Below, one piece after another: positions 16,137 to 45,317 of a stretch of DNA of 64,000 bases. Within the stretch, counting starts at the first letter, position 1. Each line of letters starts with the position of its first letter. The position numbers and the translations under genes were made by a program. Source of the DNA: Octopus sinensis (lineage: Eukaryota); assembly GCF_006345805.1 (NCBI RefSeq), contig NC_043019.1, forward strand, positions 9,733,360 to 9,797,359, written 5' to 3'. The notes under the pieces are model-generated. The model made no database searches, was not told the DNA's origin, and was given only the letters and a program-made list of their open reading frames with translations.

Positions 16137-16201
16137 TTTGCCAGGTTTGTTTTTGCTTCTTTTTCTTTCCTCCTTCACAGGATTCACTTTTGCATGACTG
16201 A
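16137..16201 (+). other. tandem cryptic 3' splice sites leading to premature stops (acceptors before 16137 and 16181)
   Basis: cttttcctttttgcag and ttttctttcctccttcacag. The 16181 acceptor reads DSLLHD*; two TGCATG motifs at 16191 and 16202. Confidence 0.3.
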
Positions 16202-20956: not shown

Positions 20957-21019
20957 CCTGTGGGGTTTGTCACCTTTAATTCAAGAGTTGAAGCAGAGGC
21001 AGCTAAACAAGATTTACAG
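20957..21019 (+). CDS. cpo: cpo exon (PVGFVTFNSRVEAEAAKQDLQ; RNP1 and helix 2), phase 0/0
   Basis: Long pyrimidine tract plus tag acceptor, donor gtaaca; 63 nt; continues the previous exon in frame. Confidence 0.95.
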
Positions 21020-22543: not shown

Positions 22544-22592
<49 letters not shown>

Positions 22593-25230
22593 GGTTATAT
22601 ACTATTTATAGTCCTTTATCTAAAAAATAATATTGATTATATTTATCATGGATCGATACTCAATCCTTATGCTTTTGTTTATCTTATTTTATTTTATTTC
22701 CCGAGTTCTTCCTTTCATGATATATGTAAATAACGACATTTACTTGTTAGTTACTGTGAATAATCCTTATTTAAGTAACTTCAAATTTGGCTACTTCTAA
22801 AAAAACTTAGTAATATTTTGATATCCATTACTATATCTATGGGATAATGTGGGTTGTAGTTATCACAGTTCTAAGTCTTTGCTCATATTTTTTACAGAAT
22901 TCTTCCTCTGATAAACTACTTGAATATAGAACATTTGTTAGTTACTCTATATCAATAACTTTAAATAAAAGAGAAGACTCATTATATTAATATAATACTA
23001 TATTATCATTTATGTAATTTTTTTTGTGTAATTATAAAAAAATGCAAAGTATTGCATATAAATAAATCATTAGCTGTAATACTAGAAGTAGGTTTTTTTT
23101 TTCGAACGTGCATCAGCACATTTAGAGAATAAGTATTTATTTACATGGTTTATTACCATCTCTAGATTAAGTAAGACCCTGACACTTAATTCATTTATAT
23201 ACATATATAATATTATTGTTGTTTGCTATTAAAATAGCCAAAGATTATCTTCAAACTAAATAAATATGGATTTATAGTATTTGAGATATATACAAATATA
23301 TTTCAATAGTTGTAGATTTACTTAATTATTTTGTCCATTATATTTTTTTTTAATTGTACTTAACACTCACACTCCTAAAGATTAGTATTTGAATCATTTT
23401 TTTTTTTTGCAATCTGGCCGTCTTTTCACATGGAATTTTGTCTGTCTTTTGAACCAAAACCTTGAAGAGACTTATATACATGGATATGAATTGTTTATAA
23501 ATCAAATAATGTATATAAGTCAAAACAAATTGTTGGCTTTTTTGGTTTTTTAATGATTTTTTTAATGTTATCTCATATTATATTATATTCATAGTATATG
23601 ATGTTTTACACACTCCTTTGAAGGAATTTCTTTCCTTAGTCTGTTACTTTATATATATATATATATATACCTTATAATTCTTCCAAAATGAACAGAATAT
23701 GCTTTGCTGAGGAAATCTGTCTGCTACTTTCACCTGTTGATTTTAAAAACAAAATCCACTCTCATCTGAACCAGCTTTATTTTTGAACAATTACAACTAT
23801 TTAAATTATCAGCCATAACTCCCTTATCTGGATGATTTGTGTACTAACTGAACTAATAATTTCAATTAAAAAATCATAATTTTTCAACTCATGTTAAAAT
23901 GTGAGATTCTTTTCTATGTGTAATTGGTATGCAGAACTTTTCCCTAAGGTATTTTCTCTCGGATAAATTTCCTATTGTTGGTGTTTGAGAATATGGTGGA
24001 GCTTGTGCTATATAGGATCTTCCTTGGGAACTAGCTTAAAAATAACACAAAACCATAAGTTGTTTTCATATCCTTTGCATTGTTCCTTCAATGATACATT
24101 TCATTTTATCATGTTGGTGTTCTAGAAAGTTAGCATCACATTTTTGTTATTTAAAAATTTCTGTTCATTTACCTAGAAGTGATTACTTATAGAACTCAAT
24201 GCAAACATATAAAGTATTCAGTAATACATTAAAAGTGAAAGGCTCTAAATTGCCAGAGCTCTGAATTTTACATTTCTACTCTTTCAGCTTGTAGTCTGAT
24301 CCATTTTTCTCTTTAATTATCCAAAGTTTTTCTGATAGCCTCTGTTCAATATTCAAAAATTTATTGAAACATCAATAAGTCGAGAGAAAACAAGCTCAGA
24401 TTACCAACTGAAAGAGCAGGAATGTGAAACTTAGGGCATGGGATATTTCTAGACTTTCAGTTGTAACGTGTATGAGTGTGTATTAAAAATATTTCAACAT
24501 ATATATGTAAATGTATGATTTTGCATTGTTTGTGTATATGTGTATGTGTTTTACTAATTACAAAATAATTTACTACTTCATTAATAAAAGTTAACAAAAA
24601 AGTAATAAGAATCAAAACACAAAAACTCAACACACCTCCACCCAATAATATTCATTCAGTATGGATTTTATACATCTATTTTCTCTTGTTATTTTTCAGT
24701 CCACCTGAAGAAACAATATGGTCAGCATTATTGAAACTCATTATTGGCTTTTTAACGTTGTTCCATAAAGTTTCTATACCAGTAAGCTTATTTGCCAGAG
24801 CAGCCCAACAACTGAAATTGGGAAAATGGTGACCTACCCTCTCCCCCACCAAATCTTATATTTTAAATATATATTTTTAGAAGATGACATAGAAAGTGGA
24901 ATAATTATAATTATGATGATGACGATGATGACAATAATAATAATAATAATAAAATATAATTTAAAGTGAGAAATGAAAAGATTTTGGCCATTGAAGGAGA
25001 GAACTGTATTTCTTGTTGTTGAACCCTAGAAAGTATGAAGCTCACAAACAAACCAAATCGAAAGGATAGGAGTAAATGTGAAAGCAGAGCAAATATAGAA
25101 AATTTGCATTGCTTGGAACCACATAAATTGTTAACAAAGTTATTGAAATCTGAATGAAGAGCCTTGCTTTAGTCCACTGGTTGTTGAAGGTTGACAACAC
25201 CTATTACATCCCCCGGCAAAGATGTTCTGT

Positions 25231-25299
<69 letters not shown>

Positions 25300-25439
25300 G
25301 TGATGATGATTTTAATAATACAACAGTTACTTTAAAAATATATATTTCCTTTTTTTTACCTTGTGCAATTTAAAAGATAATTATTGTTTTTTCTTTGTTT
25401 CTACCCCCACCTCTTACATGATCTAATATTAAGATAAAT

Positions 25440-27183
25440 ATTTTGAGTTTGAATTTCACAAGTGTTGGCTTTCCCTTTCATCTTTCTAGGATCAATAAAT
25501 CAAAGTAGCAGTCTGGTACAGAGCAAATTTAATCAACTGTATTCTATCTTGAAAAGTGTGTGACCTTGTGTCTCTCTTAGATATTATTCTTATTAATGCT
25601 GGTGATGTGATGGAAGCAGTAGATGGTCAACCTCAATGCTGACTGGCTGAATGGTATTTAGTTAAATCTCTTAACATTCAGAGAACCAATCCACCCAAGG
25701 TGAACCTTGACTTTTGTCCTCTCTGAGGTTAATAAAAGATGTAGTTCCAAGGAAGTATAAGGGTTAACTAAATTGATAGTACCTAATCCCTGAAATAGCG
25801 TGATTTTATGCCTCAAAAGTAATCCAGGTCCTTGTGGTCTATAAAAGAAGTGGATTGGCAAAACCATCCAAGCATTGAACAAATGCTTAGTTCTGTTTAG
25901 TTATGACCCTTTGATTCTGAATTTGTATCTGATCAAGGTTGACCATGCGTTTCAACTCTTTGATAAATAAAGTACCAGTTGAGTACTGGGGATTGATGTT
26001 TTAGTGAAGAGTCAACATGAATCCTGTGTCCCTGTTTGTGTTAAGGTGCATGTAGTGGTGTGACAAACAACATCAAGTTGAAGTTAAACAGCCAAGTTTT
26101 TATAACAGTGTTCATACAAAAGTGAATGTGAACAAACAAGAGTTGTACGAACATAGTTACATCTGATGTGATTGAAGCTGAAACATTAGAGAGTAAGAAA
26201 TGTGCCTGCAACATAATGCAGTAGCAGTAATGGCCAAAGGCGAAGCAAGCTAGTTGTCCTCACTGGCTGTGTTTGTTGACAAGCAGCCTGCCTAGAAGGG
26301 GTAGCAGCAAACAAGAGAAAGATTCGTTGTCCCTCTAGGGTTTTTATACCTCCCTAGCAGAAGTGCCATTGCAGCGCCACCTAGTGACAACAGAATGAGG
26401 AAGCATAACTCTGCCCTATTCCTTTTAGTCCTTATGGCCCTTGCTACAATGTAATCTATTAAATCCCTCCCCTCAAATTTGCTGGCCCTGTGCCAAAATC
26501 AGAAACCCTTGTTATTATTATCATTATTATTATTATTATTATTATTATTCAGATGGCAGAATCATTAGTGCATTTGACAAAATGTTTAGTGGCATATTTC
26601 TAGCTCTTAACCTTCTGAGTTCAAATCTCACAAGGGTTGACATTGTTTTTTGGATAAAAGGACAAAAAAATATATGCTACCAGTCAAGAAACAGTGTCAC
26701 TGTTTTCAATTTGTCCCCTCCCTTCAAAATTGCAAGCCTTGTACCAAAATTATCATTTTTATCATAATGGGGAGCACAACAGGCATTTCTTCTGGCTTTT
26801 TATCTTCTGAGTTCAAAGCCTGCCTTTCATCCTTTCAGGGTTAACAAAGTAAGGATCATTTGGACACTATGGTACATGTCAGCAATTAGCTCCCCCACAC
26901 GATACAGAAATTTCAGACTTTTTACCTAGAATAGAAAGGATTATTATTATTATTATTATTATTATATTATTATTATAATTATGAGCTGGCAGGATCGTTA
27001 GCATGCTGGACAAGATAGTGGCATTTCGTCTGTCTGTGCATTCTGAGTTCAAATTCTGCTGAGGTTAACTTTACCTTTCATACTTTCAGGGTTGGTAAAA
27101 TAAGTACCAGTTGAACATTGAGGTTGATTATATCAACTTTCCCCTCCCTAAAATTGCTGGCCTTGAGCCCAGATTTTAAGCCA

Positions 27184-27190
<7 letters not shown>
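25440..27190 (+). mobile_element. cluster of at least 7 co-oriented SINE copies (gagctggcagaatc...ttctgagttcaaat...ctttcatccttt family)
   Basis: Copies at about 25440, 25660, 25880, 26445, 26550, 26780 and 26980, several ending in (ATT)n tails. Confidence 0.8.
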
Positions 27191-27233
<43 letters not shown>

Positions 27234-27283
27234 TAATAATATAATAAAAGAATTTATTATTATTATTATTATCATTATTATTA

Positions 27284-27332
<49 letters not shown>

Positions 27333-27343
27333 CATTATTATTA

Positions 27344-27383
<40 letters not shown>

Positions 27384-27400
27384 CATCATCATCATCATAG
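27185..27400. repeat. (ATT)n/(ATC)n microsatellite; similar array at 29770-29965 and (ACT)n at about 27640-27800
   Basis: Direct reading. Confidence 0.95.
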
Positions 27401-27751
27401 AGAAGTAAATAGATTAGTGTAGATGGTGAGAGTAGGCCCTGTCTCCTCTCCTGGATCATAACTCCTATGTTCATATTCTTCTACAAGTATCATAGAACAT
27501 ATTTAAGCAGAACATTAAACCATCCCATACCCAGCAGAAAAAAAAAAACATAAACAGGAAGAAAATCAAATCAAAAACAGCAATGAAGGAAAGTAATTTA
27601 AATAAATTCATCATTGAATTTAATGCATAGATTTATTACTATTACTACTACTACTACTACTACTACAATTACTACTACTACTACTAGCACTATTGCCACT
27701 AGCACCATCACCACTACTACTACACCACACTGTTGTAACTGCTGCCACAGC

Positions 27752-27790
<39 letters not shown>

Positions 27791-27945
27791 ACTATTAGAC
27801 TTACTACTAATGGTAGTATTATTACTATATTATTACCATGAATAGGAATTATAATGATTATTATTTATACTATGAGTGTAGCTACTGTTGTTGCTCTTGT
27901 TCATGTTGTTACCATGACTACCTCTGCTACTTCAACATTCAATGC

Positions 27946-27989
<44 letters not shown>

Positions 27990-28298
27990 ATTAATTCATG
28001 GATTAATTCATCTTCTCTTCGAAACTAATAAGTTTTTAAAAATCTGTGATAAGACTGTGCATCATCATTAAGGAACTTTGGAAAACTGTTTACAACCTAT
28101 ATCTGCCTCTAATGGAACTATCTCCAATATCTCATGAGTATAACCTCACCCACTAAGATGTCTAGAGAACTCAAATGTATTTTAGCTGATGAGTACGGGA
28201 CACTTTTATCTGCTGCAATTTTTGCAACTTGTAATAAAGCCTGTCTTTGTATGAAACAATTGTACTAAAAACTAATCCATTCTTGTTGCTTCTTTCTC

Positions 28299-28346
<48 letters not shown>

Positions 28347-29214
28347 CAGAAGCAACAGAGTGACAAAAAGGCAAAGGGTTTTGTGTGTTGGCACTTATCA
28401 AACCTTTCATATATATATATATATATTTATCACTGACCTCATACCTTGTGAGAGGAATTTTACTCTGTACTGCAGTGTAATAAAGGCAGCTTCTGTATAG
28501 TTGCTTGCTCTGCTAGAAACAGCTTAATCTTCATCAAATTACACCTTACCATAAAAAAAATGAAAGAATACATTAGATTTATGTAAGACAAAAAAGACAC
28601 AAAGGTCATGACTAGGACTAGGACTCTTTTTTATCAATGCTCTGCTCAGTACTTTTACTGCTTATGCAGTAATAACTCATGACAACTAGGCGGGATTGGC
28701 CAGGACAGTATGGCATGACCTGGTCTCCCTTCAATATATAACCTATCCTTTTAACCAACTGCATTTTTCTGGAATGTACAGCTCACATAGGCTTGTGGAA
28801 ATTTCTGCCTAATAATAAGGATAACTTGGATGAATATGAGTGCACATATGTATGTGTGAGTGTGTGTATATATATATATATATATAAAACACATACACCC
28901 TTCTCTATGTCCACTCTGTTTTCCAGTGCTCTTTATTACTTTATATGAAGTCATTATATTTTGTTTGCTACTTAAAGAGAATCCCTAAAGCAGCCAGCAA
29001 GTTCTGTTTTTCATTTTGACATCTCAAAAATGATGTCCTAAAAATTTAAACCGTTGGAAAATAAAGAAATATATATAACATACAAAAACAGAAAATTATT
29101 ACCAGATATTCATTCTCATAATTTTGTTGGGTTTCCATTAATATTTTTAGAAACTTATCTAGCTAAATGTACTCTACATTTTCAAATATTTTTTCTTAAA
29201 ATTGTTTTGCTGTT

Positions 29215-29787
29215 CGATTATTGGCAGAATCTTTTGGATATCAGGCCAATTGCTTAGCAGCATTTCTTCTGGTTCTGAATATTCTGTGTTCAAATCCTGC
29301 TCAGATTAACCTTACCTCTCATCCTTTCAGAGTTGATGAGCTGGCAGAATCATTAGTACATCAAATAAAATACCCAGTAGCATTTCTTCTGGCTCTTTAC
29401 AGTGTGAGTTCAAATCCCACCAAGGTTAACTTTATCTTTCATCTATTTGGGGGTTGCTAAAAATAAAGTAACTAGTCAAGTACTGGGGAAGATTGAAGTA
29501 ATTGTCTAACTTCTCCCTTCAAAATGACTGTTTTCGGAGCCTAATTAAAAAACTGTTTTTACTATTATTCAGGTGAGCTGGGAGAATTGTTTGCATGCCA
29601 GGCAAAATGCTTAGCAATATTTCATCTGCCTTCACATTCAGAGTTCAAATTCTGCCAAGATTGACTTTGCCTTTTGTCCTTTCGGGGTAAATCCTAGTTA
29701 AGTACTAGGATCAATGTAACTGACCACCCCCTCCCTCAAATTTCAGACCTGTGCCTATAGTAGAAAGGATTATTATTATTATTATTA

Positions 29788-29836
<49 letters not shown>

Positions 29837-29837
29837 C

Positions 29838-29902
<65 letters not shown>

Positions 29903-29906
29903 TATC

Positions 29907-29965
<59 letters not shown>

Positions 29966-30265
29966 CAGAGCAGCAAGCTGGCAGAACTGTTAGCAAGCCA
30001 GGTAAAATGCTTAGCAGCATTTTGTCCATCCTTACATTCTGAGTTCAAATTCCGCCCTGTTTGACTTTGCCTTTCATCCTTTCAAGATCAATAAAATAAG
30101 TACCAGTTGCATACTGGGTCGATCTAATTGACTGGCCCCTTCCCCCAAAATTTTGTGCCTTGTGCCTAGAGTAGGAAAGGATAAAGTAAGTAGCAGTTGA
30201 GTACTGGGATCAATGCAACAACTTAATCCCTCCCTGGTCTTGTGTCAAAATTTGAAACCATTATT
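29215..30265 (+). mobile_element. head-to-tail array of 4-5 copies of the same SINE
   Basis: Copies at about 29215, 29336, 29570 and 29968, plus a 3' fragment at about 30180. Confidence 0.85.
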
Positions 30266-31004
30266 GTTATTATTATTGATTATTATTATTATTATCGTTA
30301 TTATTATTGGTAGTGGTGGTGGCGGTTGTGGTAGTAATTGAAGCAGAGTAGAAGGCAAAATCTTGTCTGGCTGAGTCCTGGTTTCACAACTTTCACATTT
30401 TTAACTAGTGTTCTTGAGGACAAAACATGAACATCACAAAGTCTTGTTTTTTCTCACTTCTTTAACTTTCAAGATGTTGCTGCATTCCATTGAAAAGAAT
30501 AAGATGATGATGAAAGAAGAACCAGACATGTTTTATGGTTGATTAAATCAGCCGTACTCCTTCCATACAAATATGGTGGGCCAAAATTAGAAATCATCAC
30601 CGTTGTTATCATTATTATTATTGCACATACATACACACCCACACACACTCAGTTCATCTTTCTATTTATCTGTCTCTCAACTTTTTATCTATCAATCAAT
30701 CCGTTCCCCAGTGGTTTACCAAACACAGTTCCAGCATTTTGAAACCATGTCCAGTAACAATCACCATTATCACACACCATTAATTATTTGATGATAGTAA
30801 TGATGGTAATAATAATAATAATGTTACTTGTTTTTTACCCACTGCTCTCTACATCCGACTTTGATTTAACCAACCTCTGAAAAACACTGAAAATTCTAAG
30901 TCGTTCTTATGATTTCTCTCTCTTTCTCTCGTTCACACTCCCTTTTTGTCTCTATTCATTTCATATATACATACATACAAACCCATGTGTGTATGTGGTA
31001 TAGG

Positions 31005-31150
31005 TGTAGGCGTTGCTTCCCAACTACATGGTTCTTGGTTCAGTCCCATTTCATGGCACCTTCAGAAAAGTGTCTGATACTCTAGCCTTGGGCCAACCAA
31101 AGCCTTGTGAGTGGATTTTGAAGACAGAAACTGAAAGAAGCCCGTTGTAT
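31005..31150 (+). mobile_element. second SINE family (cttcccaac..ggttcagtccc..ggcacc..gccttgtgagtggattt..gaaactgaaagaagccc); antisense copies at about 34990, 36245, 47345, 47665, 53905 and 63590
   Basis: Recurrent motif recognised on both strands. Confidence 0.75.
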
Positions 31151-31274
31151 ATATATACATGTGTATTTGTGTGTGTGTGCATGTGTGTGTATATATATGC
31201 TGTGCATATATATATGTGTAAGTATGTGTGTATGTACATATATATGTGTAAGTATGTGTGTATGTACATATATA

Positions 31275-31357
31275 CATTCGATCACAGCACCAATAACAGT
31301 TAAGCTTCGTGCAATGGCCATACTCGATAACAAGGGGGCAGCCATAATAATAATAAT
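31275..31357 (+). mobile_element. LINE 3' tail fragment with (AAT)n; inverted near-identical copy at 51849-51931
   Basis: 3 mismatches over about 75 nt against the reverse complement of 51849-51931. Confidence 0.85.
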
Positions 31358-31435
31358 GTAATGTGTGTGCATATGTATGCATATTTATGCATGTGTATGC
31401 ATGCATATATATAGGTATGTGTGTGTGTATGTATG

Positions 31436-31490
<55 letters not shown>

Positions 31491-31559
31491 GTATGTACAT
31501 ACATTTATGTGCGCTCACTTTGCAGGGAATTTCTGCTATTTATTTTATGTGTATATGTA

Positions 31560-31629
<70 letters not shown>

Positions 31630-31976
31630 TGTGTATGTGTGTCATGTTAGGCTGGAGATGAGAGCGATGACCTCTCTGGCAAACACTATATGGAGACAGG
31701 CTGTGTGTCGTGAGTCAGCTGCAAAAGATGTTTCCCTGCAGCTTCAACAACAGTAACGTTGTCCTTTATAGGACCGCCACATTCCGTTGGCAAATAAACT
31801 TTACTGTGTATATGTATGTATATATAAATGCATGCATGTATATATGTGTGTGTGTATGTGTATATGTATGTGCATATATATATGTGTGTGTATGTGTATA
31901 TATATATATGTATGCATGTATATATGTATATGTATATATATTTGTATGTATATGTATATACGTATGTATATATATC

Positions 31977-32009
<33 letters not shown>

Positions 32010-32279
32010 GTATGTATGTTTATATATATTTATATATATATATACATACATATACATATATATATTTGTACGTGTGTTTATATTTATATACATATGTATG
32101 TAAGTATGCATGTGGTCATAGTTTGATTCCGCTCTGTGTAGCTTAATGTTTCATACACTCATCACACAAACCAAGCTCTTCCAAACCTCCGTTACATAAC
32201 AAAAACTACATTTCATTGATGGCTTTGCAAGTTTCTGTTTTTCTCTGTCTGCCTCTCTCTTTCTCTCTCCTCTTTTCAG

Positions 32280-32297
32280 TCTCTTCATTGTTATCTG
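32280..32297 (+). CDS. candidate 18-nt alternative microexon (SLHCYL) in the cpo RRM
   Basis: About 46-nt AG-free pyrimidine tract ending ttttcag, then TCTCTTCATTGTTATCTG, then gtaaga. Frame-preserving with no stop, in unique sequence. Confidence 0.55.
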
Positions 32298-33539
32298 GTA
32301 AGAAATGTGGAGTGTCTGAATTGATAGTATATTAGACTGGATGCCTTATGGTCGTTCATGAGAGCCTTTCAAATTTTGCCACAGTTGACCACTTATTTGT
32401 TCTTTTGTGAGTGAATATAAAATAAACATCAGCCATGCTCTGAACTGATTTCATTGGTATAGTGCCCATTATCCGAAATTTGAGGTCTTGTGCTTATATG
32501 AGAAATCCATTGTTAATTGTTTGCAAGATACTTGAAGAGTCACTTGTCTTACATCTGAAATATTTAACTAGGACATATATACAAATATATATATGCCTAT
32601 GCCAGTATTAGTGTATGCTCTGAAAGAATACTTTAATTCCATTTATGGATGCTACTTTTGCTAGGTATTGGATTGTGGATAGCATATAGCCATGAGCTTC
32701 AAACTTAAAAATGTGCTTCTACTGGTTCTACAGAAAGCCACAGTGTATCACTTTAGTTGTAAATAGAGTGACAAATACAATTTCTTATATGCTATTTTCT
32801 TTCCAATTCTATAACTAAAAACATCAAAGATCTTTGCCTTGTAAAGATGGAAATCAAGCAGATAGGAATATAGCAAATTTACAATATTATTTCTCATAGT
32901 TCTTCAAATACTTTTAATACAATATAATGATATCCTCTTAATGGAATAGAGCCTATTGTTTCAGGAAACTGACAACATTAGTATTATTTATCATTGCAAT
33001 GCCACTTACTGGCTAGGATGAAATTAAAGATAAATTTCCCTCAAATCACACCCTAAAATTATTGTTTCATGATACACTTGGCTGAAAATATAAATTGGCA
33101 ATTGTTATGATCGAAATACATTTTATTTATAGATCTATTTGATCCAATTTGACATGGGCATAAACAAATCTAGTGGTAATAGCTTGTCACTGATGGTAAA
33201 TATCTATCTCAGATATAACAGAAGCATATTGATCATGCTTAGATAATTTTTCGTTTTTATATCGATTTCAGCTACTTCCTTGACCCTAGGCTTCAGCTGT
33301 TATGATGCCAACTCAACTTTCGCTTGATTTTCTTACCTTTATTTCAACCTGTCACAAAACAGATTTCTAGAGAATGTTGAAATGTAATGTATGCCACGTG
33401 TTACAAAATCATATAACATGAAGAATACATTAATGACAGAAAATTGAAGTTGTAGCTAAATATCAGGAACAGAAGAATGTTATGTTTAACACATTCCAAT
33501 ATTTAATTTGAATCTCATAGAGATGACAAAAAAAGACTT

Positions 33540-33860
33540 CCTGAGCTGTTCCCTAACCTATGCCTTAGCATTTCTGACTTATAGACACATGCCAGGCATA
33601 TGCTGTCATATATAGGATGGATAAGACAATCAGCTGAGTACATTGGGAAGATTGTCCTGCTGCTTCCTTTGTCTGAGAGCGACAGGTAGTCTTTATATCT
33701 GATGGATTTGGCAAATGAGGTTGTGAGGTAGACAAGACTGAAAGGGTTGCAGACAGAAACCTTGCGCTTTGGCAAAGTCCTTATCTTTTCCAAGTTTCAC
33801 TTGAAAAGGTAAGCGTGGGCAGAGAGGGAAGTGCTGCATCCCCAGCAAATTCATTGAAAG
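33540..33860 (+). mobile_element. Tx1/L1-like LINE 3' coding relic
   Basis: Homologous to 60200-60480 (atcagctga, gaggtt.tg.gg..gac, aagtt.cacttg). Confidence 0.6.
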
Positions 33861-34579
33861 GGGGATGAAAGTGGAAAGGATGTTTCAAGTGAAAAGGTTT
33901 GTTCTGAACTTGCACCTGTAGACTGAGGGAAGAAGTTAGAAGGTAAGGAGAGGGCGCTTACCCCAGGTGTCAGGATGACTAGTTTTGTTAAGCTTCCATG
34001 ATCAGTCCTAGAAGATCTCTTGTCTTTTGAGGAATTATTTGATCTCTTTGTTCCTTTGTTTCTTTTACTCTTCACACACTTTATGTAACTCCATATTGGT
34101 ATCCTCTTGCACCATTCCTGACCTTTTTGGAAATCTTTAGGATTAATTAAGGAAACATTATTATTATTACCACTCTTCATCCTTTGAATAACATTATTAT
34201 TATCATTATTATTCACTCCTTAGTGTAAAAAAACTCAGTTGTTAGTCAACCAATTCCATTTTTGAATTAAGAAAACTCACATCACATTTAACACTCCACA
34301 TCATACACATTCACACACTCACTCAGACACACTTTGTGTATATATATATATATATATATATTTCTCTCTCACACCCACACACCATCACAAATACACATCT
34401 ACATTTTTATTGTACAATTGTCAATTATTTCCTTTTTAATGTGTGCACATGTGAGTCCCTGTGTGTGTATGTGTGTGTGTGTGTAAGTAGTAAAAATTTG
34501 GCTTAATATGACCAAACTCTTGTAAAGGTGTGTGTGTGTGTGCATACACACACATGCACACACCATCATCATAATCATA

Positions 34580-34905
34580 ATTATCATCATCATCATCATC
34601 ATCACATCCACTCGTTCGTGCTTGCATGAACCAGATGGAACTTACTGGGGGCAGATTTTGATCAGCTGGTTGCCCTTCCTGTTGCCAACCCTCACTTGTT
34701 TCCAAGTAAGGTAATATTTCCCTGAGACCAGGCATGGTTTTTCGTGAGATATTAGAAATGACTTTATTGCTTGTATGATGGCACTGTTCATTTACAAACA
34801 TCAAATGATACAACGGGACACACGCATACACATACTCATATATGTACATACATCATCATCGTTTAACAAACATCCACCTTATGTGTGTGTGTGTGTATAT
34901 ATGTA

Positions 34906-34963
<58 letters not shown>

Positions 34964-36240
34964 ATGAGTGTATGAGTATGTGTATGCAACAATGTGCTTT
35001 CAGTTTCTATTTACTAAATCTATTGGAATGGCTATAAAAAAAGACACTCACTTAAAATATCTTGTAATGGGGCTGAACCTGAAAGCAAATAGCTGGGAAG
35101 CAAGCCACACCTGCACATAGGACTGACCCATGGGTATTTTGCACCTTAGGCTTGTCTTACAATATGCAATTCCTGCTCCTACTACTTTCTCTTCTACTTC
35201 CTCTGGTCATCAACCTCTTTTACACCAGCTGAAAAATTTACCCTTCAAAATTATAATTCACTTGTAAACAAAGAAAACAGCTGTATGACTATGTGTATCA
35301 CTGAGTAAATCTGTAATTTGGTAAAGTTTGAAATGTTTCACTCCAAATCATGTGACTGGTCATTGAATACCCTCCATTACACCTTGCCAACTTTATATGT
35401 TCCTCCTCTGTTCCGAAGGTATTCTCACCAGCTCCCTTTGTTAATCAGCTTCCTTGTTTGTAATCAGATTTAAAATTTTGTCTAAATTCTTCAGAATATG
35501 TGAGGCTCACCCACCAGATTGTAGGACCATAGGCAGTTGCCTAGTACTTGGTATCAGAGCCAATGGTGATGATGATATATATATGTATGGAGGCAATGTG
35601 GCTGATGCTGGTGTCATGTGTCTAGCCCCTGTGCTGGTGGCATGTAAAAAGCACCTTCCAAGCGTTGGGCTTCACAGAGGCAATGACAAATGACCAGGAC
35701 CTTTGGCAATATGCCATATTTGAGAAGAAGACCCATCAAGCCAAGTAAAATCGTTTTGGTCATGGCAAATACTTGTGTCATGCAACTGGCACCTGTGACG
35801 GTGACATGTCAAAGCACCCATTACACTCTCAGAGTGGTTAGCATTAGGAAGGGCATCCAGCTGCAGAAACTATGCCAAACCGCACTGGAGTTTGGTGCAG
35901 GCTTCAGCCTAGCCAGCTTTTGTGAAACTGTCCCACCTATGCTAGCTATGATGATAATGATGAAATGTATAAATGTCTCCTCATCATCATGTTTCACTGT
36001 CCACCTCTCCATGCTTGCATGGGTCAGATGGAATTTTTTAGGGCAGATTTTCTATAGCCAGGTGCCCTTTCTGTCACCAATGCTTCCCTCTTTCCAAGCA
36101 GGGCAATATTTTCCCGTAGCAAAGCACGTTTTGCACAGAAGTCTGGAAATGAACAACCTTGCTTATATGATTGTGATGTTCATTTTCAACCATCACATGG
36201 TGTCTATGCAGAGGTACACATGCATATACATACTGTGCAT
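34580..36240. mobile_element. RTE-tailed short elements: 34580-34830 (-), 35590-35960 (+), 35983-36240 (-)
   Basis: (ATC)n/(GAT)n tails and tgcccttcc/ggaagggcatcc-type motifs. Confidence 0.75.
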
Positions 36241-36849
36241 ATGAAAACTACTCCATTCACAAGGCTTTGGTTAGCCCCAGATGATATTAGTAAACATTAA
36301 GGTGCCATGCAGTGGGACTGAACCCAAGACCACATGATTCAGAAGCAAGCTCCTTAACCACACAGTCACACCTTAACTGTACCTTTATATATATATATAT
36401 GCATATGCATATAATCAAAATAAGTAATGAGGATATCTACAGGTAATGCAGTACGATCGTTTCATGCAACTTCATTTAAATGAACAATGCAATCATTTCA
36501 TCAATTTAGAATGCAGAACAATCTTCAGCTGCACAAAGACATAGAATTTAATTAAATTAGAACAGATGTTCTAATTTAATCAAATTCTATGTTCTAATTT
36601 AACTAAATTCTGGTGCCTCAACTGAAGTACCATATTCATCTGAATCAAAATCATGGCTGGTCTTACCAATCAGTTTTACATAAAGAATACAACGGAGTGT
36701 TGGGCATCAACCTGATTATATAACTTTATGCACATCAGAGTTAGCCAAAGGGAATATGGCGACTGCTCCCTATTGTAAGAGTTGGATTAGTACAAGTCAG
36801 CGGCTGCTGTGAAAAAGTGGTGGAACAAAAAGAGTCAGGGATTAGTTTA

Positions 36850-37480
36850 GGAGTTATGTTCCTTGGTTGGGTATGCCATGAAGCCAGTAAGAGTTATCTT
36901 GAAGTGGCGAATGTGTGTATTTGGAATGTAGTACTCCTGTTGGGATGGGCTGTGTGGTATATGTAACAGTGTCATATGTAGAACTTTTTCTAGGGGTGTA
37001 GGTGTATATAGCTGTGGTTGTTGGTCTGTTTTTTTTCAGTAAAAGATAAAGCCATGGGGGAAGGGAGGTTATGTTAACATGTGGTGCATAATGTCTAAGG
37101 GGGGGGGGTATATCTAGGGGTATAATTTGTTTGAAGGTGTATGTGTCGGAAGTGGTGGGAGACAGTTTATTTTGTAGAGTGTCCACCTTATGGTGGTGTG
37201 TGCAGGTGTGTACATGGGTGCCTTGGGGTGTGCTTTGGTCAAACTCTTTTTGACAGGCTCAAGGGCATTGGTGAAAGGTTCCTTACAGATGGTCAAGGCA
37301 GGGGACCTGTGGTAGCAGTCATGGTGGAGCATGCAGGTACCATAGAATGTACCTCCTTTCATGCAGGCAAGGATTAAACACCTCACACCTACTATTCAGG
37401 TAAACATCCAGGTGTTGGGTACCTTCTAAAATCACTCCTTTCTCAGCCAAGCATAATCAGCACTTCCCGCTGCTATTGAA
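36850..37480. mobile_element. unclassified degenerate interspersed element; second copy at about 55130-55800
   Basis: Shared tgtacct.ct.tcatgcaggca...tccaggtg segment. Confidence 0.4.
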
Positions 37481-37883
37481 GTACAGTTTGCATCTTTCTA
37501 GGACCTTCCACTTTATGTTGTACTCCATGGCACTCTCTTTCAAAGTTCAGACAAGCTTGGCTAGGGTTGTAACATTACGTCTCTCTGGAATGTTGAATGA
37601 GGACTTGTTGTTATTAAAATGGTTTCTGAAGAGGCCTTCCATTTCCCCCACATATTTGCACATGCTCAGTTATCCATTGGGTCCTGTTGTTGTCACTTTT
37701 GCCTCGTAAACAACTGTTACCACATTGCAGAAGCTGTTTAGTGGACAAGTTGTATTACTCCTGCATGAGCATTCTGCCTCAGCCTCAGGTCTGCACTTAC
37801 TTACTAAAATCTTTTTTACACTAGGTGCTCAGTTGAAGGATAATCTCAGAGTATGTCCATTAAATACTTTGTTGAATCTATTG

Positions 37884-37934
<51 letters not shown>

Positions 37935-38229
37935 GTGTATATATATATATATATATATATGCATATATATATATATATATATATAGTGTATATATATATA
38001 TATATATATATATAAGTGTGTGTCAATCTTTTGCTCAGTAACATTTTTGCCTTTTTGAGCATCACTCTCCTAATAATATTACCTGTAAACATCTCTTGAA
38101 CTTTTCTTCATATTCTTTTTTTCTTTTCCATATTCAGTTTGCTTTGTGTGTGCAAGATCTCTCTCAAAACAGAGCCAAATTTTGATTTCACATGCAATTT
38201 CTTTATCTTCTAATCAGACTTAGAACCTC

Positions 38230-38760
38230 CAAACTAGTTACCTCCACTGTTATTGCACAACTTATAGAATTTTTTTCCAGTTTTAGAATGTGTTTTCAGG
38301 GTTTAGTACACAGTTCTCATAGCAATTATTCTTTGATCTTTTCCTTCATTTGAAATCAGCAACCTTTGAGGAAGACTTTCTACCTTGGGAACCAAAAAAA
38401 TGTCTGTAGGGGGCGCTGATCCAAAGTGTAGATTGGCTGGAGGATGAGAGTGTCTCATGCTTTGTTAAAATGTCATAGATAAACAGTGATTCGAAGGTAG
38501 GGTATTGTCATGGTGCAGCATGCAGGTTTTGTTTGTCTATGCATCAAGCTGCTTCCTTAGACAGTTTCTCTCAAACACTTCAGCACATCCAAGTAAAAAT
38601 CTTTAAGCCTTCCTGTCAAAAAATATTTTAAATCATCACTTTCACTTTTAAATGGCTCTTACATGCTTTTTGGGGTCACAGCAAGATTCGTGTGACAACT
38701 GCATTTTTGTTTTAGTATCTTCAGCCATTTTCATCACTTGTTATGACACTTTTCAAAAAG
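38230..38760 (-). mobile_element. degenerate mariner transposase relic
   Basis: Minus strand LHAAP*QYPT...SSSSQSTLWISAPYRHFFWFPR, a frameshifted HHDNAP / YSPDLAP.DFFLFP-like pattern. Confidence 0.5.
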
Positions 38761-40209
38761 TTTTCATCAGCATCCATGTGATTAAATAATTGTTATTTGA
38801 CTGTGTTTCAGTTCTACTTAACACAATGCATCTTCAATTTTCTTTTCAAAATCCTTTATCACAAACATTTACAGATGCCTATTTCTCCAGAAACTTCAAA
38901 ATAAAAAGAAAGAACAATTTTCATGCATCACAGTACACTCATTTGCAATGTGATCATCATCTATTGTCGTGGAAAATCATCCAGATTTGATATCATTGCT
39001 GGATGTTCTCAATTTGAAACACCAGTACTGCTTGTGACATTATGTGTGACTCAATCCACCTTCCCCAATAGACCTGCTTTCACATTAGAAAAGTTTCCAT
39101 ACAAAGTTTTTTTTTTCCAATCTAAAACAGAATTTAATATAAATATGTTCTTTGAAATATTTCTTTCATAGGCTTGCAATGCCTTAAATGTATGTTCACT
39201 CTGGCACAAGTAGATTAATGGCTAACTGATGTGGCATGATGTGGCTAATTACTAAATTAAAGTTGAGGTCACCCATACTCAGCATTGCAGTTGCAAACAT
39301 TTACCTGCTGGCTTGCATGCTGTTTTAAAAGTTTGGTTTCTTTTCAGACAGATCTTGTATATACTCTACTTCTACAAATGTTTCTATTCCAGAAGTAATT
39401 GAAAAAGCCGGGATTGTTCTGTCTGATGATAATGCTGTTTACTTCTATATGTTTGTCACACTTCAATATATCATTTCTGATTGATTTCTCTATTCCATGA
39501 CACATTAACAAATTCCAGAAGCCCACCTTCATTGCTAATGCAGCTTTCATTCAGTTTGCTAAAGAAAAATGACATATTTATAAACTGAAGCATTTTTCAT
39601 CCATATCTGTACAGCACAATCACTAAGTCCCATTAGGCATGAATATATTCGTTTTACCTTGCACAGATGGGCTATTAGAGTATATTGTTTTCAATAATTT
39701 TCATATCTTTGGAATGGCTCAACTCTGGCAGTTAATGGGCACTAAGCTTCTAATACATGATATCTCGCTTATTTTGGACACCATTTTTAACACAAAGAGC
39801 ATCATTGTTAAATATTGGCTCGTTTGGAGTTGTGAGAGCTGTATATACAGTCATTTTGCATATGATAAGTGCTGCAAAACAAAATATATTGCAACAAGTG
39901 AGTATAGAACACCATGCAAACCCAATCAGGTAGACACACACTTGTGCATACTCACACACGTCTATCAGCATACAGGCACAGAGAAACAATCTCTCCCTCC
40001 TCCTTTCATAAAACTTTTAACTTTTACTTGAAGAGTTTTTAGTCAAATAAATTAATCCCAGTACTAAATAATTAATAAGCCTTGCACTTTCTCTATGGAT
40101 CCTTTTTGCCAAACCACTAAGTTACAGACAAATATGTATGCATATATATATATATATATATATAAAGGACAAATGCATATATATATGTATATATATATAC
40201 ATATATATA

Positions 40210-40447
40210 TTCTCCCAAAGAGCCTGAGGGACCTGCACAAAGTGGATGTGGGTGTTTTCAAATCAAAACTGGACCTCTTCCTGTCAAGAGTCCCAAATGA
40301 ACCTACCTCACGGCAAGAGGTGCAAATGAGTATAGCGAAACCAAACTCAAATACCAAGTGCCACATATTCTAATATGATGGCTCTCAGTAATAACAGTGT
40401 AGCAAAAGAGTGGTGCCCCAGCATGGCCACACCTCCGAGCTGAAGCT
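40210..40447 (+). mobile_element. CR1-like LINE 3' end
   Basis: LPKSLRDLHKVDVGVFKSKLDLFLSRVPNEP, then a ggtgccccagcatggcc tail; flanked by (TA)n. Confidence 0.8.
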
Positions 40448-40461
40448 ACATATATATATAT

Positions 40462-43165
40462 ATCATTATCATCATCATCATCTTCATTTAGCATCCGCTT
40501 TCCATGCTAGCATGGGTTGGACGGTTAAACTGGGGTCTATGAAGCCAGAAGCCTGCACCAGGCTCCAGTCTGATCTGGCAGTGTTTCTACAGCTGGATGC
40601 CCTTCCTAACGCCAACCACTCCGTGAGTGTAGTGGGTGCTTTTTACGTGCCACCCGCACCAGACGGGGCTGGCAAACGGCCACGGACGGATGGTGCTTTT
40701 TACATGCCACCGGCACGGGGGCCAGGTGAGGCTGGCAATGGCCAAGATCGGATGGTGCTTTTTACGTGCCACCGGCATGGAGGCCAGTCAGGGAGGCACT
40801 GGCAACGGCCACGATCGGATGGTTCACTTACTTGTCACCGGCACTGGTATCACAGCTGCAATTTCCATTGATGTTGATCGACTTCGATTTTGGTTCTGCT
40901 TTCTGATATCTGATTTGATTTGATTTGATTTGATTTTTGATTTTCACTTGCCTCACGGGTCTTCACAAGTGGAGTTTTGTGTCCCAAGAAGGAAAGGTAT
41001 GTTTAAGTCGACTGGCTACATACCAGGTAAAGGCCACGGGTTATGGTCTCACTAGTCTTGCCGGGTCTTCTCACGCACAGCATACTTCCATAAGTCTCGG
41101 TCTCTAGTCATTTCCTTGGTGAGACCTAAAGTTCGAAGGTCGTGCTTCACCACCTCGTCCCAGGTTTTCCTGGGTCTACCTCTTCCACAGGTTCCCTCAA
41201 CCACTAGAGTGTGGCACTTTTGCACACAACTATCTTCAGCCATTCTCATCACATGACCATACCAGCGCAAACGTCTCTCTTGCACACCACAACTGATGCT
41301 TCTTAGGTCCAACTATTCTCTCAAGGTACTTACACTCTGTCGAGTATGAACACTGACATTACACATCCATCAGAGCATACTGGCTTCATTTCTTGCGAGC
41401 TTATGCATATCCTCAGCAGTCACAGCCCATGTTTCACTACCATGTAGCATGGCTGTTCGTACACATGCATCATACAGTCTGCCTTGTACTCTGAGCGAGA
41501 GGCCTTTTGTCACCAGCAGCCATAAGAGCTCTCTGAACTTTGCTCAGGCTATTCTTACTCTAGCAGTTACACTTTCAGCACACCCACCCCTGCTACTGAC
41601 TTGGTCACCTAGGTAGCAGAAGCTATCAACTACTTCTAGTTTTTCTCCCTGGAATGTGGTAGAATTTGGTCTCTGCGCATTTTCAGTGTTTATTGCTCCT
41701 GAGCATCTGCCACAAACAAAAACTATTTTCCTAGTTAGCCTTCCTTTGACATTATGTGTCCATAGCTTACACTTGGTGCATCTTATAGAGTTTCTACCTA
41801 CACCTTTTCTACAGATCGAGCAGGGCCATCTACCTGAAGGTGTTTGTGATTGGTCTACCTTCCTACTTATTAGGACTTTGGTTTTGGCTAGGTTGATTCT
41901 AAGGCGCTTCGATTCTAATCCTTGCTTCCACACCTGAAACTTATCCTCCAGTTCTGATAGTGACTCAGCAATTAGAGCAAAGTCGTCAGCATAGAGGAGC
42001 TCCCAGGGGTATCCTGTCTTGAATTCCTCCGTTATTGCCTGGAGGACTATGATAACTAGGAGGGGACTGAGGACTGAACCTTGGTGGACCCCAACCTCTA
42101 CCCGTAATTCTTCACTGTACTCGTTGCCAACCCTCACCATACTAGCAGCGTCTCTGTACATGGCTCACACAGCTCTCACTAACCATTCATCTATCCCTAG
42201 TTTCCTCATTGACCACCAGATAAGGGATCGGGGGACCCTGTCGAAGGCTTTCTCCATGTCAACAAAAGCCAGGTACAGGGGCTTATCTTTGGCTAGGTAT
42301 TTCTCCTGCAGCTGTCTTACCAGGAATATAGCATCAGTGGTACTTTTCCCTGGCACGAACCCAAACTGCATGTCCTCTAAGCTAACTCTCTCTCTAATTA
42401 GTTGGGCTATAACCCTCTCCGTAACCTTCATTACCTGATCCAGCTGCTTGATACCCCTGTAGTTATTTGTATCTAGGGCGTCAGCTTTACCTTTGTAGCA
42501 GTTGATTATTATGCTGCTACACCAGTCATTGGGAATGACTCCTTCGTGTATCACCTGGTTAACTATACGGGTGACTAGGCTATAGCCGACACTACCAGAT
42601 ATTTTGAGCATCTCTGCAGTAATTCCTGATGGGCCTGGGGCTTTCCCTGTTTTCATGCTTGTATTTGCCTTAACTACTAAGGAACTGTCAACTCGGATTG
42701 CTGGTCCCTCTGTTGGGTCGGCATTCGGCAGACTCTCTTTATCCCATTCATTTTCCTCATTCAGCAACCTTTCATAGTGGCATCTCCAAACCTCTCTCTT
42801 TGCATCCTCATTTAGCGCAAGAGAACCGTCATCCTTGCGAACACATTTCTCTCCTACCACGTCATGATTCTCTCTCACACACTGTTTTTGCAACACAAAA
42901 TACCTCATGTCTTTCATCCTCATGGCGCAGAACATTGGCAAATGTTTTCTTATCTGCTTCCCCTCTGGCTAAATACACCTGTCTCCTAGCTTCCCTTCTG
43001 GCAGTCTGATACACTTCCCTGCTACCACCGTTCTTCCAGTCCTTCCAAGCCTGTTTCTTTTGTCTAATAGCCCTGTCAACAATATTGTTCCACCACCACG
43101 TTATTTTGGGTCTTGAGGGGGGGGGGGGGAATTCGCACCAGCAACAGATCTGGTCAGTGGCTTTC
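40462..43165 (-). mobile_element. 5'-truncated RTE LINE, about 2.7 kb, antisense to cpo, with (GAT)n tail
   Basis: ORFs 42862..43191, 42165..42941 (KAPGPSG, QFGFVPG, DMEKAFD), 41544..42161 (GVHQGSVLSP, YADD) and 41052..41312 (RRLRWYGHV); few disruptions. Confidence 0.95.
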
Positions 43166-43273
43166 ATATATATATATATATATATATACACATATGTATA
43201 TACATATATATATGTATATATATATATATATATGAAAGAAGGTTTGAAAATGCAATTTTAAAAGATGTTTATT

Positions 43274-43317
43274 TACTTTACCGGTTTCACTTTTTTAGAA
43301 AAAGATTGTCAAAAGTA
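43274..43317 (-). ncRNA. minimal hammerhead with U3-A8 variant core, in a Penelope-like terminus (about 43235-43365)
   Basis: Minus strand: tactt TTGACAA t-cttttt-cta-aaaaag-t GAAA ccgg TA aagta; 5-bp stem I; U-U at the base of stem II. Confidence 0.55.
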
Positions 43318-43395
43318 TCATGTAAAAGCTTGGTTGTGTTAGGTACTGGTTGTCACAAAATATTACAATATATATATATTGATATATATATATAT

Positions 43396-44625: not shown

Positions 44626-44724
44626 ATGTATATATATATAAATATATATATATATGGCATACATATATATATATATAAATATATATATATATGACATATT
44701 TATATGAATATAAATATATATATT

Positions 44725-44767
<43 letters not shown>

Positions 44768-44937
44768 TTATTAGTGAATTGAAGAAATGGAGTTGAACGA
44801 AGATTGAACAGAATTCCTTTTATTGCATTCTTCTGCCGTGATTTTTGCTACCAAGGTATCGGTTAAACTTTTGATTAATCTGCAACAAGATTATTCATCT
44901 TTCTATTTTACCAAATATATATGTATATATATATGAT

Positions 44938-45232: not shown

Positions 45233-45265
45233 TTATATATATATATATATGACATATAAATATGA

Positions 45266-45311
<46 letters not shown>

Positions 45312-45317
<6 letters not shown>

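What the first reader, a model, noticed from the sequence alone, without database searches (positions are those of the whole stretch)
32230..32305. In-frame 18-nt microexon candidate inside the Cpo/RBPMS RRM
Seen: in unique, non-TE sequence within the 27.6-kb intron, a 46-nt AG-free pyrimidine tract containing a UGC (32250-32252), then cag|TCTCTTCATTGTTATCTG|gtaaga. The flanking exons are phase 0, so inclusion gives ...[17 protein letters not shown] with no stop. Established: RBPMS-family RRMs dimerise, and from memory of the structures the loop after helix 2 (the R/K-F-D-P segment) is part of the dimer interface. Frame-preserving microexons with long pyrimidine tracts and upstream UGC are typical Srrm3/4 (eMIC) neural targets. 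Inference: a neural microexon that tunes Cpo dimerisation or RNA binding. I do not know of a description of it.
Basis: partly seen in the sequence, partly recalled or inferred. Interest (0 to 1): 0.75.

Follow-up and report, generated by a model that had tools for sequence, protein, structure and literature searches.

The report
Unverified 18-nt microexon candidate in Cpo intron
The splice-site-like pattern is really in the sequence and is unusually strong, but nothing I could search shows it is ever spliced or conserved, so it is most likely a chance decoy exon built on a CT-rich simple-sequence tract.

Summary
It lies inside a 27,595-nt phase-0 intron of a Cpo/RBPMS gene, and inclusion would insert SLHCYL.

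The structural premise also holds. The insertion point aligns between N82 and G83 of human RBPMS, just before the alpha2/beta4-loop residues that form part of the dimer interface.

The acceptor ranks 2nd of 1361 AGs in the intron and the donor 11th of 1571 GTs. I estimate roughly a 0.2-3% chance of such an in-frame pair in this intron. That is suggestive, not decisive.

- **Absent elsewhere:** none of 132 homologous proteins has more than 2 extra residues at this junction. The orthologous introns of a mussel (1483 nt) and a sea slug (375 nt) hold no comparable exon.
- **Weak supporting signals:** the single UGC is at background frequency. The pyrimidine tract abuts the AG, giving a strong rather than weak 3' splice site. 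Similar CT-rich tracts recur in the window. A pyrimidine-rich 18-mer is almost automatically stop-free.
- **Not testable here:** no transcripts or close relatives of the source organism were reachable.

Verdict: probably a pseudoexon (~0.6), a real lineage-specific microexon ~0.2-0.25.

The parts
20957..21019 (+). Cpo/RBPMS RRM exon (beta3 and alpha2), PVGFVTFNSRVEAEAAKQDLQ. Ends in phase 0, donor CAG|gtaaca.
   Evidence: tblastn against human RBPMS and molluscan Cpo. PWM scores: 3'ss 13.5, 5'ss 7.4.
21020..48614 (+). 27,595-nt phase-0 intron that contains the candidate. Rich in TA/TG microsatellites and LINE fragments.
31160..32108 (.). About 950 bp of TA/TG microsatellite arrays, ending about 120 nt upstream of the pyrimidine tract.
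   Evidence: Tandem Repeats Finder.
32216..32220 (+). Best branch-point-like sequence (TTGAT, A at 32219), 60 nt upstream of the acceptor AG. The tract itself contains no A. Inferred only.
   Evidence: Read from the sequence. No predictor was run.
32232..32277 (+). 46-nt AG-free pyrimidine tract, 43/46 C or T, CU-rich. Weakly repetitive: TTTCTCTCTC x3, TRF score 39.
32250..32252 (+). TGC (UGC) at -30 to -28 from the exon start. It lies inside the tract, with 25 nt of CU tract between it and the AG.
   Evidence: TGC is at background frequency.
32278..32279 (+). Acceptor-like AG (ttttcAG). PWM 13.9 bits, rank 2 of 1361 AGs in the intron.
32280..32297 (+). Candidate 18-nt cassette exon TCTCTTCATTGTTATCTG = SLHCYL. 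In frame, 14/18 pyrimidine.
32298..32303 (+). Donor-like CTG|GTAAGA. PWM 9.3 bits, rank 11 of 1571 GTs in the intron.
48615..48753 (+). Next RRM exon (alpha2/beta4 loop, beta4, beta5 and the C-terminal RNA-binding loop), [22 protein letters not shown]... Starts in phase 0.

Best explanation
This is a pseudoexon: a fortuitous pair of an acceptor-like and a donor-like site. A CT-rich low-complexity tract, of a kind that recurs on the sense strand of this locus and often sits next to TA/TG microsatellites, happens to end in CAG. A GTAAG happens to lie 18 nt further on.

It is either not spliced at all or spliced only at noise level, and it carries no selected function in Cpo. If it is recognised at all, the CU-rich tract (an optimal PTB-type binding sequence, from general knowledge) would be expected to keep it silent.

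Shown: the sequence, its rank among decoy sites in the window, and its absence from all reachable homologues. Inferred: that it is not used.
For: 1. Comparable decoys exist in the same intron. There are 62 acceptor/donor pairs 3-300 nt apart with both sites >=6 bits, and the candidate is only the third best. Microexon-size pairs at >=10/>=8 bits also occur on the non-coding strand.
2. CT-rich tracts (>=90% pyrimidine over 40 nt) unrelated to known exons recur on the + strand at 7097-7139, 30913-30953 and 51659-51699. Two of these abut TA/TG microsatellites. TRF sees the candidate's tract as a weak TTTCTCTCTC repeat, and it lies about 120 nt from a 950-bp microsatellite block.
3. The 'exon' is itself 78% pyrimidine, a continuation of the tract. 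SLHCYL is what pyrimidine-rich non-coding sequence translates to, and freedom from stops is automatic.
4. None of the 120 best Cpo/RBPMS homologues, nor the 10 further cluster members that span this junction, has more than 2 extra residues between KQDL(Q) and GV(R/K)FDP. The set includes RefSeq multi-isoform sets (Mytilus edulis X29, Patella X7/X8, Saccostrea X4).
5. The exon boundaries are conserved, but the orthologous intron is 1483 nt in Mytilus galloprovincialis and 375 nt in Plakobranchus, with no plausible microexon in either.
6. The UGC, CAC/GCAC, UGCAUG and YCAY motifs are all at intron background around the site.
Against: - The pair is unusually good. Across the whole 64-kb + strand, only a genuine exon (20957) has an equally pyrimidine-rich acceptor.
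- The pair is the only one at >=12/>=9 bits in 128 kb. A first-order Markov null gives 0.03 such pairs per 64 kb.
- It is a multiple of 3 between phase-0 exons.
- The long AG-exclusion zone, the UCUC-rich tract, the strong donor and a distal branch-point-like TTGAT all fit published microexon architecture.
- The insertion falls in a loop rather than in a strand or helix core.
- No direct expression data were available, so non-use is inferred and not shown.
Confidence: 0.6

Rival explanations
1. It is a genuine, lineage-specific, frame-preserving alternative microexon of Cpo/RBPMS. When included, possibly in neurons through an Srrm234/eMIC-type activator and relief from PTB repression, it inserts SLHCYL between the end of helix alpha2 and the G-V-K-F-D-P loop. 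That would displace residues contributing to the RRM homodimer interface, and so weaken or alter dimerisation and the cooperative binding of tandem CAC motifs.
For: - The splice signals are as strong as those of real exons of the gene.
- The chance expectation is about 0.002-0.03 for this intron.
- It has a 46-nt AG-exclusion zone, a CU-rich tract, a UGC between the putative branch point and the AG, and a strong 5'ss, as described for eMIC-dependent exons.
- The insertion point aligns between N82 and G83 of human RBPMS, next to Ile84, Arg85, Phe86 and Asp87 of the dimer interface. Interface mutants lower RNA affinity 3-4 fold.
- The gene already uses RRM-internal alternative splicing: a conserved pair of alternative beta2/beta3 exons.
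Against: - There is no transcript evidence.
- There is no insert in 132 homologues, and no counterpart in the mussel or sea-slug intron.
- In the SRRM3/4 architecture the pyrimidine tract and branch point are displaced from the AG, the 3'ss is weak, and the UGC lies between the tract's 3' end and the AG. Here 25 nt of CU tract follow the UGC and abut the AG, and the 3'ss is among the strongest in the intron.
- The UGC is at background frequency.
- The peptide is hydrophobic and Cys-containing. From general knowledge, microexon peptides are usually polar and charged.
Confidence: 0.22
2. The strong acceptor is used, but not for an 18-nt cassette. One option is an alternative terminal exon that reads through the donor (…[19 protein letters not shown]-stop), with the AATAAA at 32421 as poly(A) signal, giving an RRM truncated before beta4. 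Another is a decoy or intermediate splice site that affects removal of the 27.6-kb intron.
For: - The read-through frame closes after 14 codons, and an AATAAA lies 124 nt downstream of the donor.
- An oyster Logan transcript product (P0122) ends KQDLQ-VIF-stop. This shows that transcripts terminating or retained in this intron exist in a relative.
Against: - AATAAA/ATTAAA occurs 1.7 times per kb in this AT-rich intron, so the signal is not informative.
- The exon start does not regenerate a 5' splice site (CAG|TCTCTT), so the recursive-splicing definition is not met.
- A strong GTAAGA donor 18 nt downstream would normally be used.
Confidence: 0.06
3. The CU-rich tract is a functional intronic element that is not an exon. 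It could be a binding platform for PTB/hnRNP-type proteins, or on the DNA a GA/CT-rich regulatory element. On this reading the AG...GT pairing is incidental.
For: CT-rich tracts are found four times on the sense strand outside known 3' splice sites. No CT-type tract is found on the antisense strand of the window.
Against: - The strand bias rests on very small numbers.
- It can equally come from the general T>A and C>G excess of the sense strand.
- No conservation data are available.
Confidence: 0.08

Closest known systems
SRRM3/4 (eMIC)-dependent neural microexons
   Same: - 18 nt, frame-preserving, and located in a long intron of an RNA-binding-protein gene.
- 46-nt AG-exclusion zone, UCUC-rich pyrimidine tract, a UGC between the putative branch point and the AG, and a strong 5' splice site.
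   Different: - The published architecture places the tract and branch point away from the AG, with the UGC between the tract's end and the AG, and a weak 3'ss. Here the tract runs right up to the AG, the UGC is buried in it at -30, and the 3'ss is one of the strongest in the intron.
- Neural inclusion, SRRM dependence and conservation are all untested.
Intronic pseudoexons (decoy splice-site pairs) in long introns
   Same: - Good consensus sites without evidence of use.
- Several equally scoring pairs sit in the same intron.
- It is built on low-complexity sequence and absent from relatives.
   Different: It is much shorter than typical pseudoexons, and its acceptor is as good as that of the best real exon in the window.
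RBPMS/RBPMS2/MEC-8 RRM homodimer (PDB 5DET, 5CYJ, 2M9K, 5BJR)
   Same: - The host protein aligns with these chains at E 1e-15 to 1e-18.
- The residues after the insertion point (G-V-K-F-D-P) correspond to G83-I84-R85-F86-D87-P88 of the alpha2/beta4 interface loop.
   Different: None of the solved proteins, and none of the 132 homologues inspected, carries an insertion at this point.
Alternative beta2/beta3 exon pair in the molluscan Cpo RRM
   Same: It is alternative splicing inside the same RRM of the same gene. Exon a is at 2925-2975 and exon b at 14949-15002, and the pair is also present in Mytilus.
   Different: That pair is conserved across molluscan classes and is represented in database proteins (Magallana P0005 uses form a). 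The 18-mer is neither.

Membership tests
Frame-preserving cassette microexon (3-27 nt) | Length 3-27 nt, a multiple of 3, no stop, flanked by AG and GT, between exons of compatible phase | tested here: met
   18 nt, SLHCYL, cag|...|gtaaga, with phase-0 neighbours.
Frame-preserving cassette microexon (3-27 nt) | Inclusion in mature mRNA (junction reads or cDNA) | not testable with these tools
   - No RNA-seq is available.
- The protein search that included the insert found no SLHC/HCYL-containing protein and no same-species protein at all.
- The short junction query failed technically.
Frame-preserving cassette microexon (3-27 nt) | Conservation of the exon and its splice sites in related species | tested here: inconclusive
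   It is absent from the orthologous introns of Mytilus (1483 nt) and Plakobranchus (375 nt), and from 132 homologous proteins. A degenerate DNA pattern scan of metagenome contigs gave 3 unrelated chance hits.
SRRM3/4 (eMIC)-dependent neural microexon | Long AG-exclusion zone, CU-rich pyrimidine tract, strong 5' splice site | tested here: met
   The AG-exclusion zone is 46 nt. There are 15 TCTC/CTCT tetramers in the upstream 200 nt, which is the top 1.5% of intron windows. The donor ranks 11 of 1571.
SRRM3/4 (eMIC)-dependent neural microexon | [quoted passage not shown] | tested here: not met
   The UGC sits at -30 inside the tract, and 25 nt of CU tract abut the AG. The acceptor scores 13.9 bits, rank 2 of 1361. 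UGC frequency is at background.
SRRM3/4 (eMIC)-dependent neural microexon | Neuron-enriched inclusion and dependence on an eMIC-containing Srrm protein | not testable with these tools
   There are no expression data, and the Srrm234 gene of the organism is not in the window.
Recursive splice site / RS-exon | The 3' splice site is followed at once by a sequence that regenerates a 5' splice site after the first splicing step (AG|GTRAGT) | tested here: not met
   The junction would read CAG|TCTCTT.
RBPMS / Couch potato / MEC-8 RRM family (host gene) | Single RRM with the family's conserved sequence, including the alpha2/beta4 interface loop and the C-terminal RNA-binding loop | tested here: met
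   - phmmer against the PDB: MEC-8 5BJR 5.5e-18, RBPMS 5DET 2.3e-17, RBPMS2 2M9K 3.5e-15.
- There are 654 family hits, the best 88-89% identical.
- The first RRM exon (beta1-alpha1) is not in the window.

The most novel reading that the evidence does not exclude
The 18-mer is a real, young, lineage-specific alternative microexon that arose when this intron expanded from under 1.5 kb (as in a mussel and a sea slug) to 27.6 kb. It inserts six residues directly before the alpha2/beta4 loop of the Cpo/RBPMS RRM. That would produce an isoform with altered or weakened homodimerisation, and hence altered recognition of tandem CAC motifs. It would be the first reported splice-controlled switch of the RBPMS-family dimer interface.
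Probability: 0.2. Interest if true: 0.55.

Novelty: not a real feature. Interest (0 to 1): 0.25.

Why it matters
If the exon were real, it would show alternative splicing acting directly on the unusual RRM-RRM dimer interface that defines the RBPMS/Cpo/MEC-8 family. It would also be an example of a microexon born from simple sequence in an expanding intron.

As things stand, it is mainly a caution. In long, microsatellite-rich introns, a CT-rich tract followed by AG and a nearby GTAAG can imitate most of the microexon signature. The UGC and the open frame add almost no evidence.

The firmer result from this locus is the conserved pair of alternative beta2/beta3 exons inside the same RRM.

Tried and rejected
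- **Protein search with the spliced query including SLHCYL.** It returned 654 hits, none with the insert and none from the same species or a close relative. The test therefore says nothing about the species' own transcripts.
- **41-aa junction query (a 34-aa query was refused as too short).** The result was 'no candidate shares three 5-residue words', although obvious homologues exist. I treat this as a technical failure of the word index on short queries, not as evidence.
- **Attempts to identify the organism.** Exact look-up of a LINE reverse-transcriptase reading frame found nothing on record. A homology search with the same reading frame gave a best hit of 69%, unnamed. Rfam and tRNA scans of the window found nothing. 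The cephalopod origin remains unverified; the best Cpo matches are bivalve and gastropod.
- **Degenerate coding pattern of the microexon plus its splice sites in metagenome contigs.** It gave three hits with no flank similarity and no pyrimidine tract, which I take as chance.
- **Structure prediction of the RRM with the insert.** I did not pursue this by other means.
- **Homology between the candidate's CT tract and the other CT tracts in the window.** There is only low-complexity resemblance and no significant alignment, so I dropped the idea of a shared repeat family.
- **RBPMS autoregulation through CAC/GCAC clusters, and Rbfox or Nova motifs near the candidate.** All are at intron background, so I rejected this.
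- **Recursive-splicing exon.** Rejected because no 5' splice site is regenerated.
- **Literature.** I found no description of a microexon in a Cpo/RBPMS RRM.

Full report
**Observation.**
- An AG lies at 32230-31. It is followed by a 46-nt stretch (32232-32277) with no AG, no A at all, and 43/46 pyrimidines. This stretch contains TGC at 32250-52.
- Then come ttttcAG, the 18-mer TCTCTTCATTGTTATCTG (32280-32297, SLHCYL), and GTAAGA.
- The host gene is on the + strand and belongs to the RBPMS/Couch potato/MEC-8 family. phmmer against the PDB gives MEC-8 5BJR 5.5e-18, RBPMS 5DET 2.3e-17 and RBPMS2 2M9K 3.5e-15. There are 654 family hits in the protein collection.
- Its exons in the window are 2925-2975 or 14949-15002 (two alternative copies of the beta2/beta3 exon), 20957-21019, 48615-48753 and 49880-50016.
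- The junctions 21019|21020 and 48614|48615 are both phase 0, and the intron is 27,595 nt. Inclusion would give ...[23 protein letters not shown]... without a stop.

**Is it more than chance?**
- With crude criteria (>=80% pyrimidine over 40 nt, YAG, donor matching >=5 of 6 positions of GTRAGT), it is the only in-frame, stop-free AG...GT pair of 3-51 nt in the intron. Six such pairs of any frame occur in the 128 kb of both strands.
- On the + strand of the whole window, only two acceptor-like sites reach >=90% pyrimidine: the real exon at 20957 and the candidate.
- I scored sites with simple position-weight matrices, using approximate published human splice-site frequencies recalled from memory. 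The acceptor scores 13.9 bits (rank 2 of 1361 AGs in the intron) and the donor 9.3 bits (rank 11 of 1571 GTs). For comparison, real exon 20957 scores 13.5 and 7.4.
- The same intron holds 62 pseudoexon pairs of 3-300 nt with both sites >=6 bits, and the candidate is third best.
- Microexon-size pairs at >=12/>=9 bits: only the candidate in 128 kb. At >=10/>=8 bits there are three, two of them on the minus strand. First-order Markov simulations give 0.03 pairs per 64 kb at the stringent threshold.
- Putting these together, the chance expectation for an in-frame pair of this quality in this intron is roughly 0.002-0.03.
Freedom from stops is automatic in a 78% pyrimidine 18-mer. TGC occurs 2.9 times per 200 nt across the intron, so one in a 46-nt tract is unremarkable.

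**What the tract looks like in context.**
- It lies about 120 nt downstream of a 950-bp block of TA/TG microsatellites (31160-32108). Tandem Repeats Finder weakly flags it as TTTCTCTCTC x3.
- Other tracts of >=90% pyrimidine over 40 nt, not associated with known exons, occur on the + strand at 7097-7139, 30913-30953 and 51659-51699. The first two directly abut TA/TG microsatellites and share the TTTCTCTC / CTGCCT flavour.
- No significant homology links them. So CT-rich simple sequence is a recurrent component of this locus, and the candidate's 'exon' is compositionally a continuation of it.

**External evidence.**
- The protein search with the insert-containing query found nothing carrying SLHC or HCYL.
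- Of the 120 best hits plus 12 further cluster members, none has more than 2 extra residues between KQDL(Q) and GV(R/K)FDP. The variation seen is Q, QQ or QQG. The set includes RefSeq multi-isoform sets from Mytilus edulis (isoform X29), Patella vulgata (X7, X8) and Saccostrea (X4).
- The best hits are only 88-89% identical and come from bivalves. A transposon reverse-transcriptase reading frame from the window finds nothing closer than 69%. The source organism and its close relatives are therefore not represented, and the absence of the insert says nothing about this species' own transcripts.
- Genomic loci of two other molluscs could be fetched. In Mytilus galloprovincialis the exon boundaries are identical and the orthologous intron is 1483 nt. 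In Plakobranchus it is 375 nt of GAT repeats. Neither has a plausible microexon.
- If the exon is real, it is therefore young and arose with the expansion of this intron.

**Structural premise.**
- Teplova et al. (PMC4783296) state that the RBPMS RRM homodimer interface is formed by helix alpha1, the beta1/alpha1 loop and the alpha2/beta4 loop. In that loop, Ile84 and Phe86 lie in the hydrophobic core, Asp87 forms salt bridges, and the Arg85 backbone is hydrogen-bonded to Tyr41.
- Interface mutants shift the protein towards the monomer and lower RNA affinity 3-4 fold.
- The alignment puts the insertion between N82 and G83, immediately before these residues.
- I could not model this.

**Comparison with eMIC-dependent microexons.**
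- Published features are long AG-exclusion zones, UGC near the 3' splice site, long UCUC-rich tracts, strong branch points, and in mammals strong 5' splice sites.
- The more detailed description places the tract and branch point away from the AG. This gives a weak 3' splice-site context and leaves room for a bipartite UCUCUC...UGC enhancer, with the UGC between the tract's 3' end and the AG.
- The candidate meets the first group of features. It does not meet the arrangement: the UGC is at -30 inside the tract, 25 nt of CU tract follow it and abut the AG, and the acceptor is among the strongest in the intron.
- A branch-point-like TTGAT (A at 32219) lies 60 nt upstream. The AG at 32230 is only 11 nt from it, so it would probably be skipped. 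Both points are inference.
- The recursive-splicing definition is not met (CAG|TCTCTT).

**Verdict.**
The existence of the exon is unsupported by any evidence I could reach, and the indirect evidence leans against it.
- The chance expectation is about 1%. I take the prior for a real microexon in a given long intron of a neuronal RNA-binding-protein gene to be of the same order or lower.
- I then discount for the lack of any homologous insert, the composition of the 18-mer and the recurrent CT tracts.
- This gives about 0.6 for a fortuitous pseudoexon and about 0.2-0.25 for a real lineage-specific microexon, with perhaps 0.1 for the full neural, eMIC-dependent, dimer-tuning story. The remainder goes to other uses of the acceptor or the tract.
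- The question is settled cheaply by junction reads from the species' RNA-seq and by aligning the intron in sister species.

Noticed in passing
window 2925-2975 (+) and 14949-15002 (+); L001 28729-28797 and 29984-30040: There are two alternative copies of the RRM beta2/beta3 exon: GYQNALLKVMGKPGKNC (51 nt) and GYEGSLLKVTNKNGKNTS (54 nt). Both have good splice sites. The same pair exists in Mytilus galloprovincialis, and the first form is the one used in a Magallana gigas protein (P0005). This looks like a mutually exclusive exon pair inside the Cpo RRM, conserved across molluscan classes.
   Followed up: partly
window 16181-16207 (+): An acceptor-like site (82% pyrimidine, cacag|) lies in the intron after exon 14949-15002. 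It is followed at once by two TGCATG (Rbfox-type) motifs at 16191-16196 and 16202-16207.
   Followed up: no
window 21020-21067 (+); protein P0122: An oyster transcript product from Logan (P0122, 101 aa) ends KQDLQ-VIF-stop, meaning it reads into the orthologous intron. In the window the equivalent read-through would give KQDLQ-VTTVQPVDFFFQFVF-stop. There may be a conserved truncated, intron-retaining or intronically polyadenylated form that lacks beta4 and beta5.
   Followed up: no
window 29331-29572, 29403-29572, 25490-25699, 26839-26848 (+): Other pseudoexon-like acceptor/donor pairs in the same intron score about the same as the candidate (sum of PWM scores 21.6-24.4, against 23.2 for the candidate).
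   Followed up: no
window 7097-7139, 30913-30953, 51659-51699 (+): CT-rich tracts (>=90% pyrimidine over 40 nt) occur on the sense strand only. Two of them directly abut TA/TG microsatellites. The only purine-rich counterparts on the + strand are a poly(A) tract at 55026-55068 and a (GAA)n repeat at 57914-57974.
   Followed up: partly
window 10938-12385 (-), 41544-44660 (-), 52886-53260 (+), 58643-59029 (+): These are fragments of LINE-type reverse-transcriptase reading frames. The 320-aa frame at 10938-11900 has no database relative closer than 69% identity, so the source genome and its near relatives seem absent from the protein collection.
   Followed up: partly
window 5152-5562 (-), 7642-8004 (+), 40410-40871 (+): A dispersed repeat occurs at least three times in the window. 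Its spurious reading frames share the string LQLDALPNANHS(V/E)SVV(G/S)AFY(V/T)PP. It is probably a SINE-like element.
   Followed up: no
window 50017-64000; proteins P0121, P0124: Long bivalve isoforms, named 'U1 snRNP A-like' in RefSeq, carry a second C-terminal RRM (…STLFVANLGQFSSEQELKDLF…). tblastn found no match to it in the window downstream of exon 49880-50016. The gene may continue beyond the window, or this organism may lack that domain.
   Followed up: no
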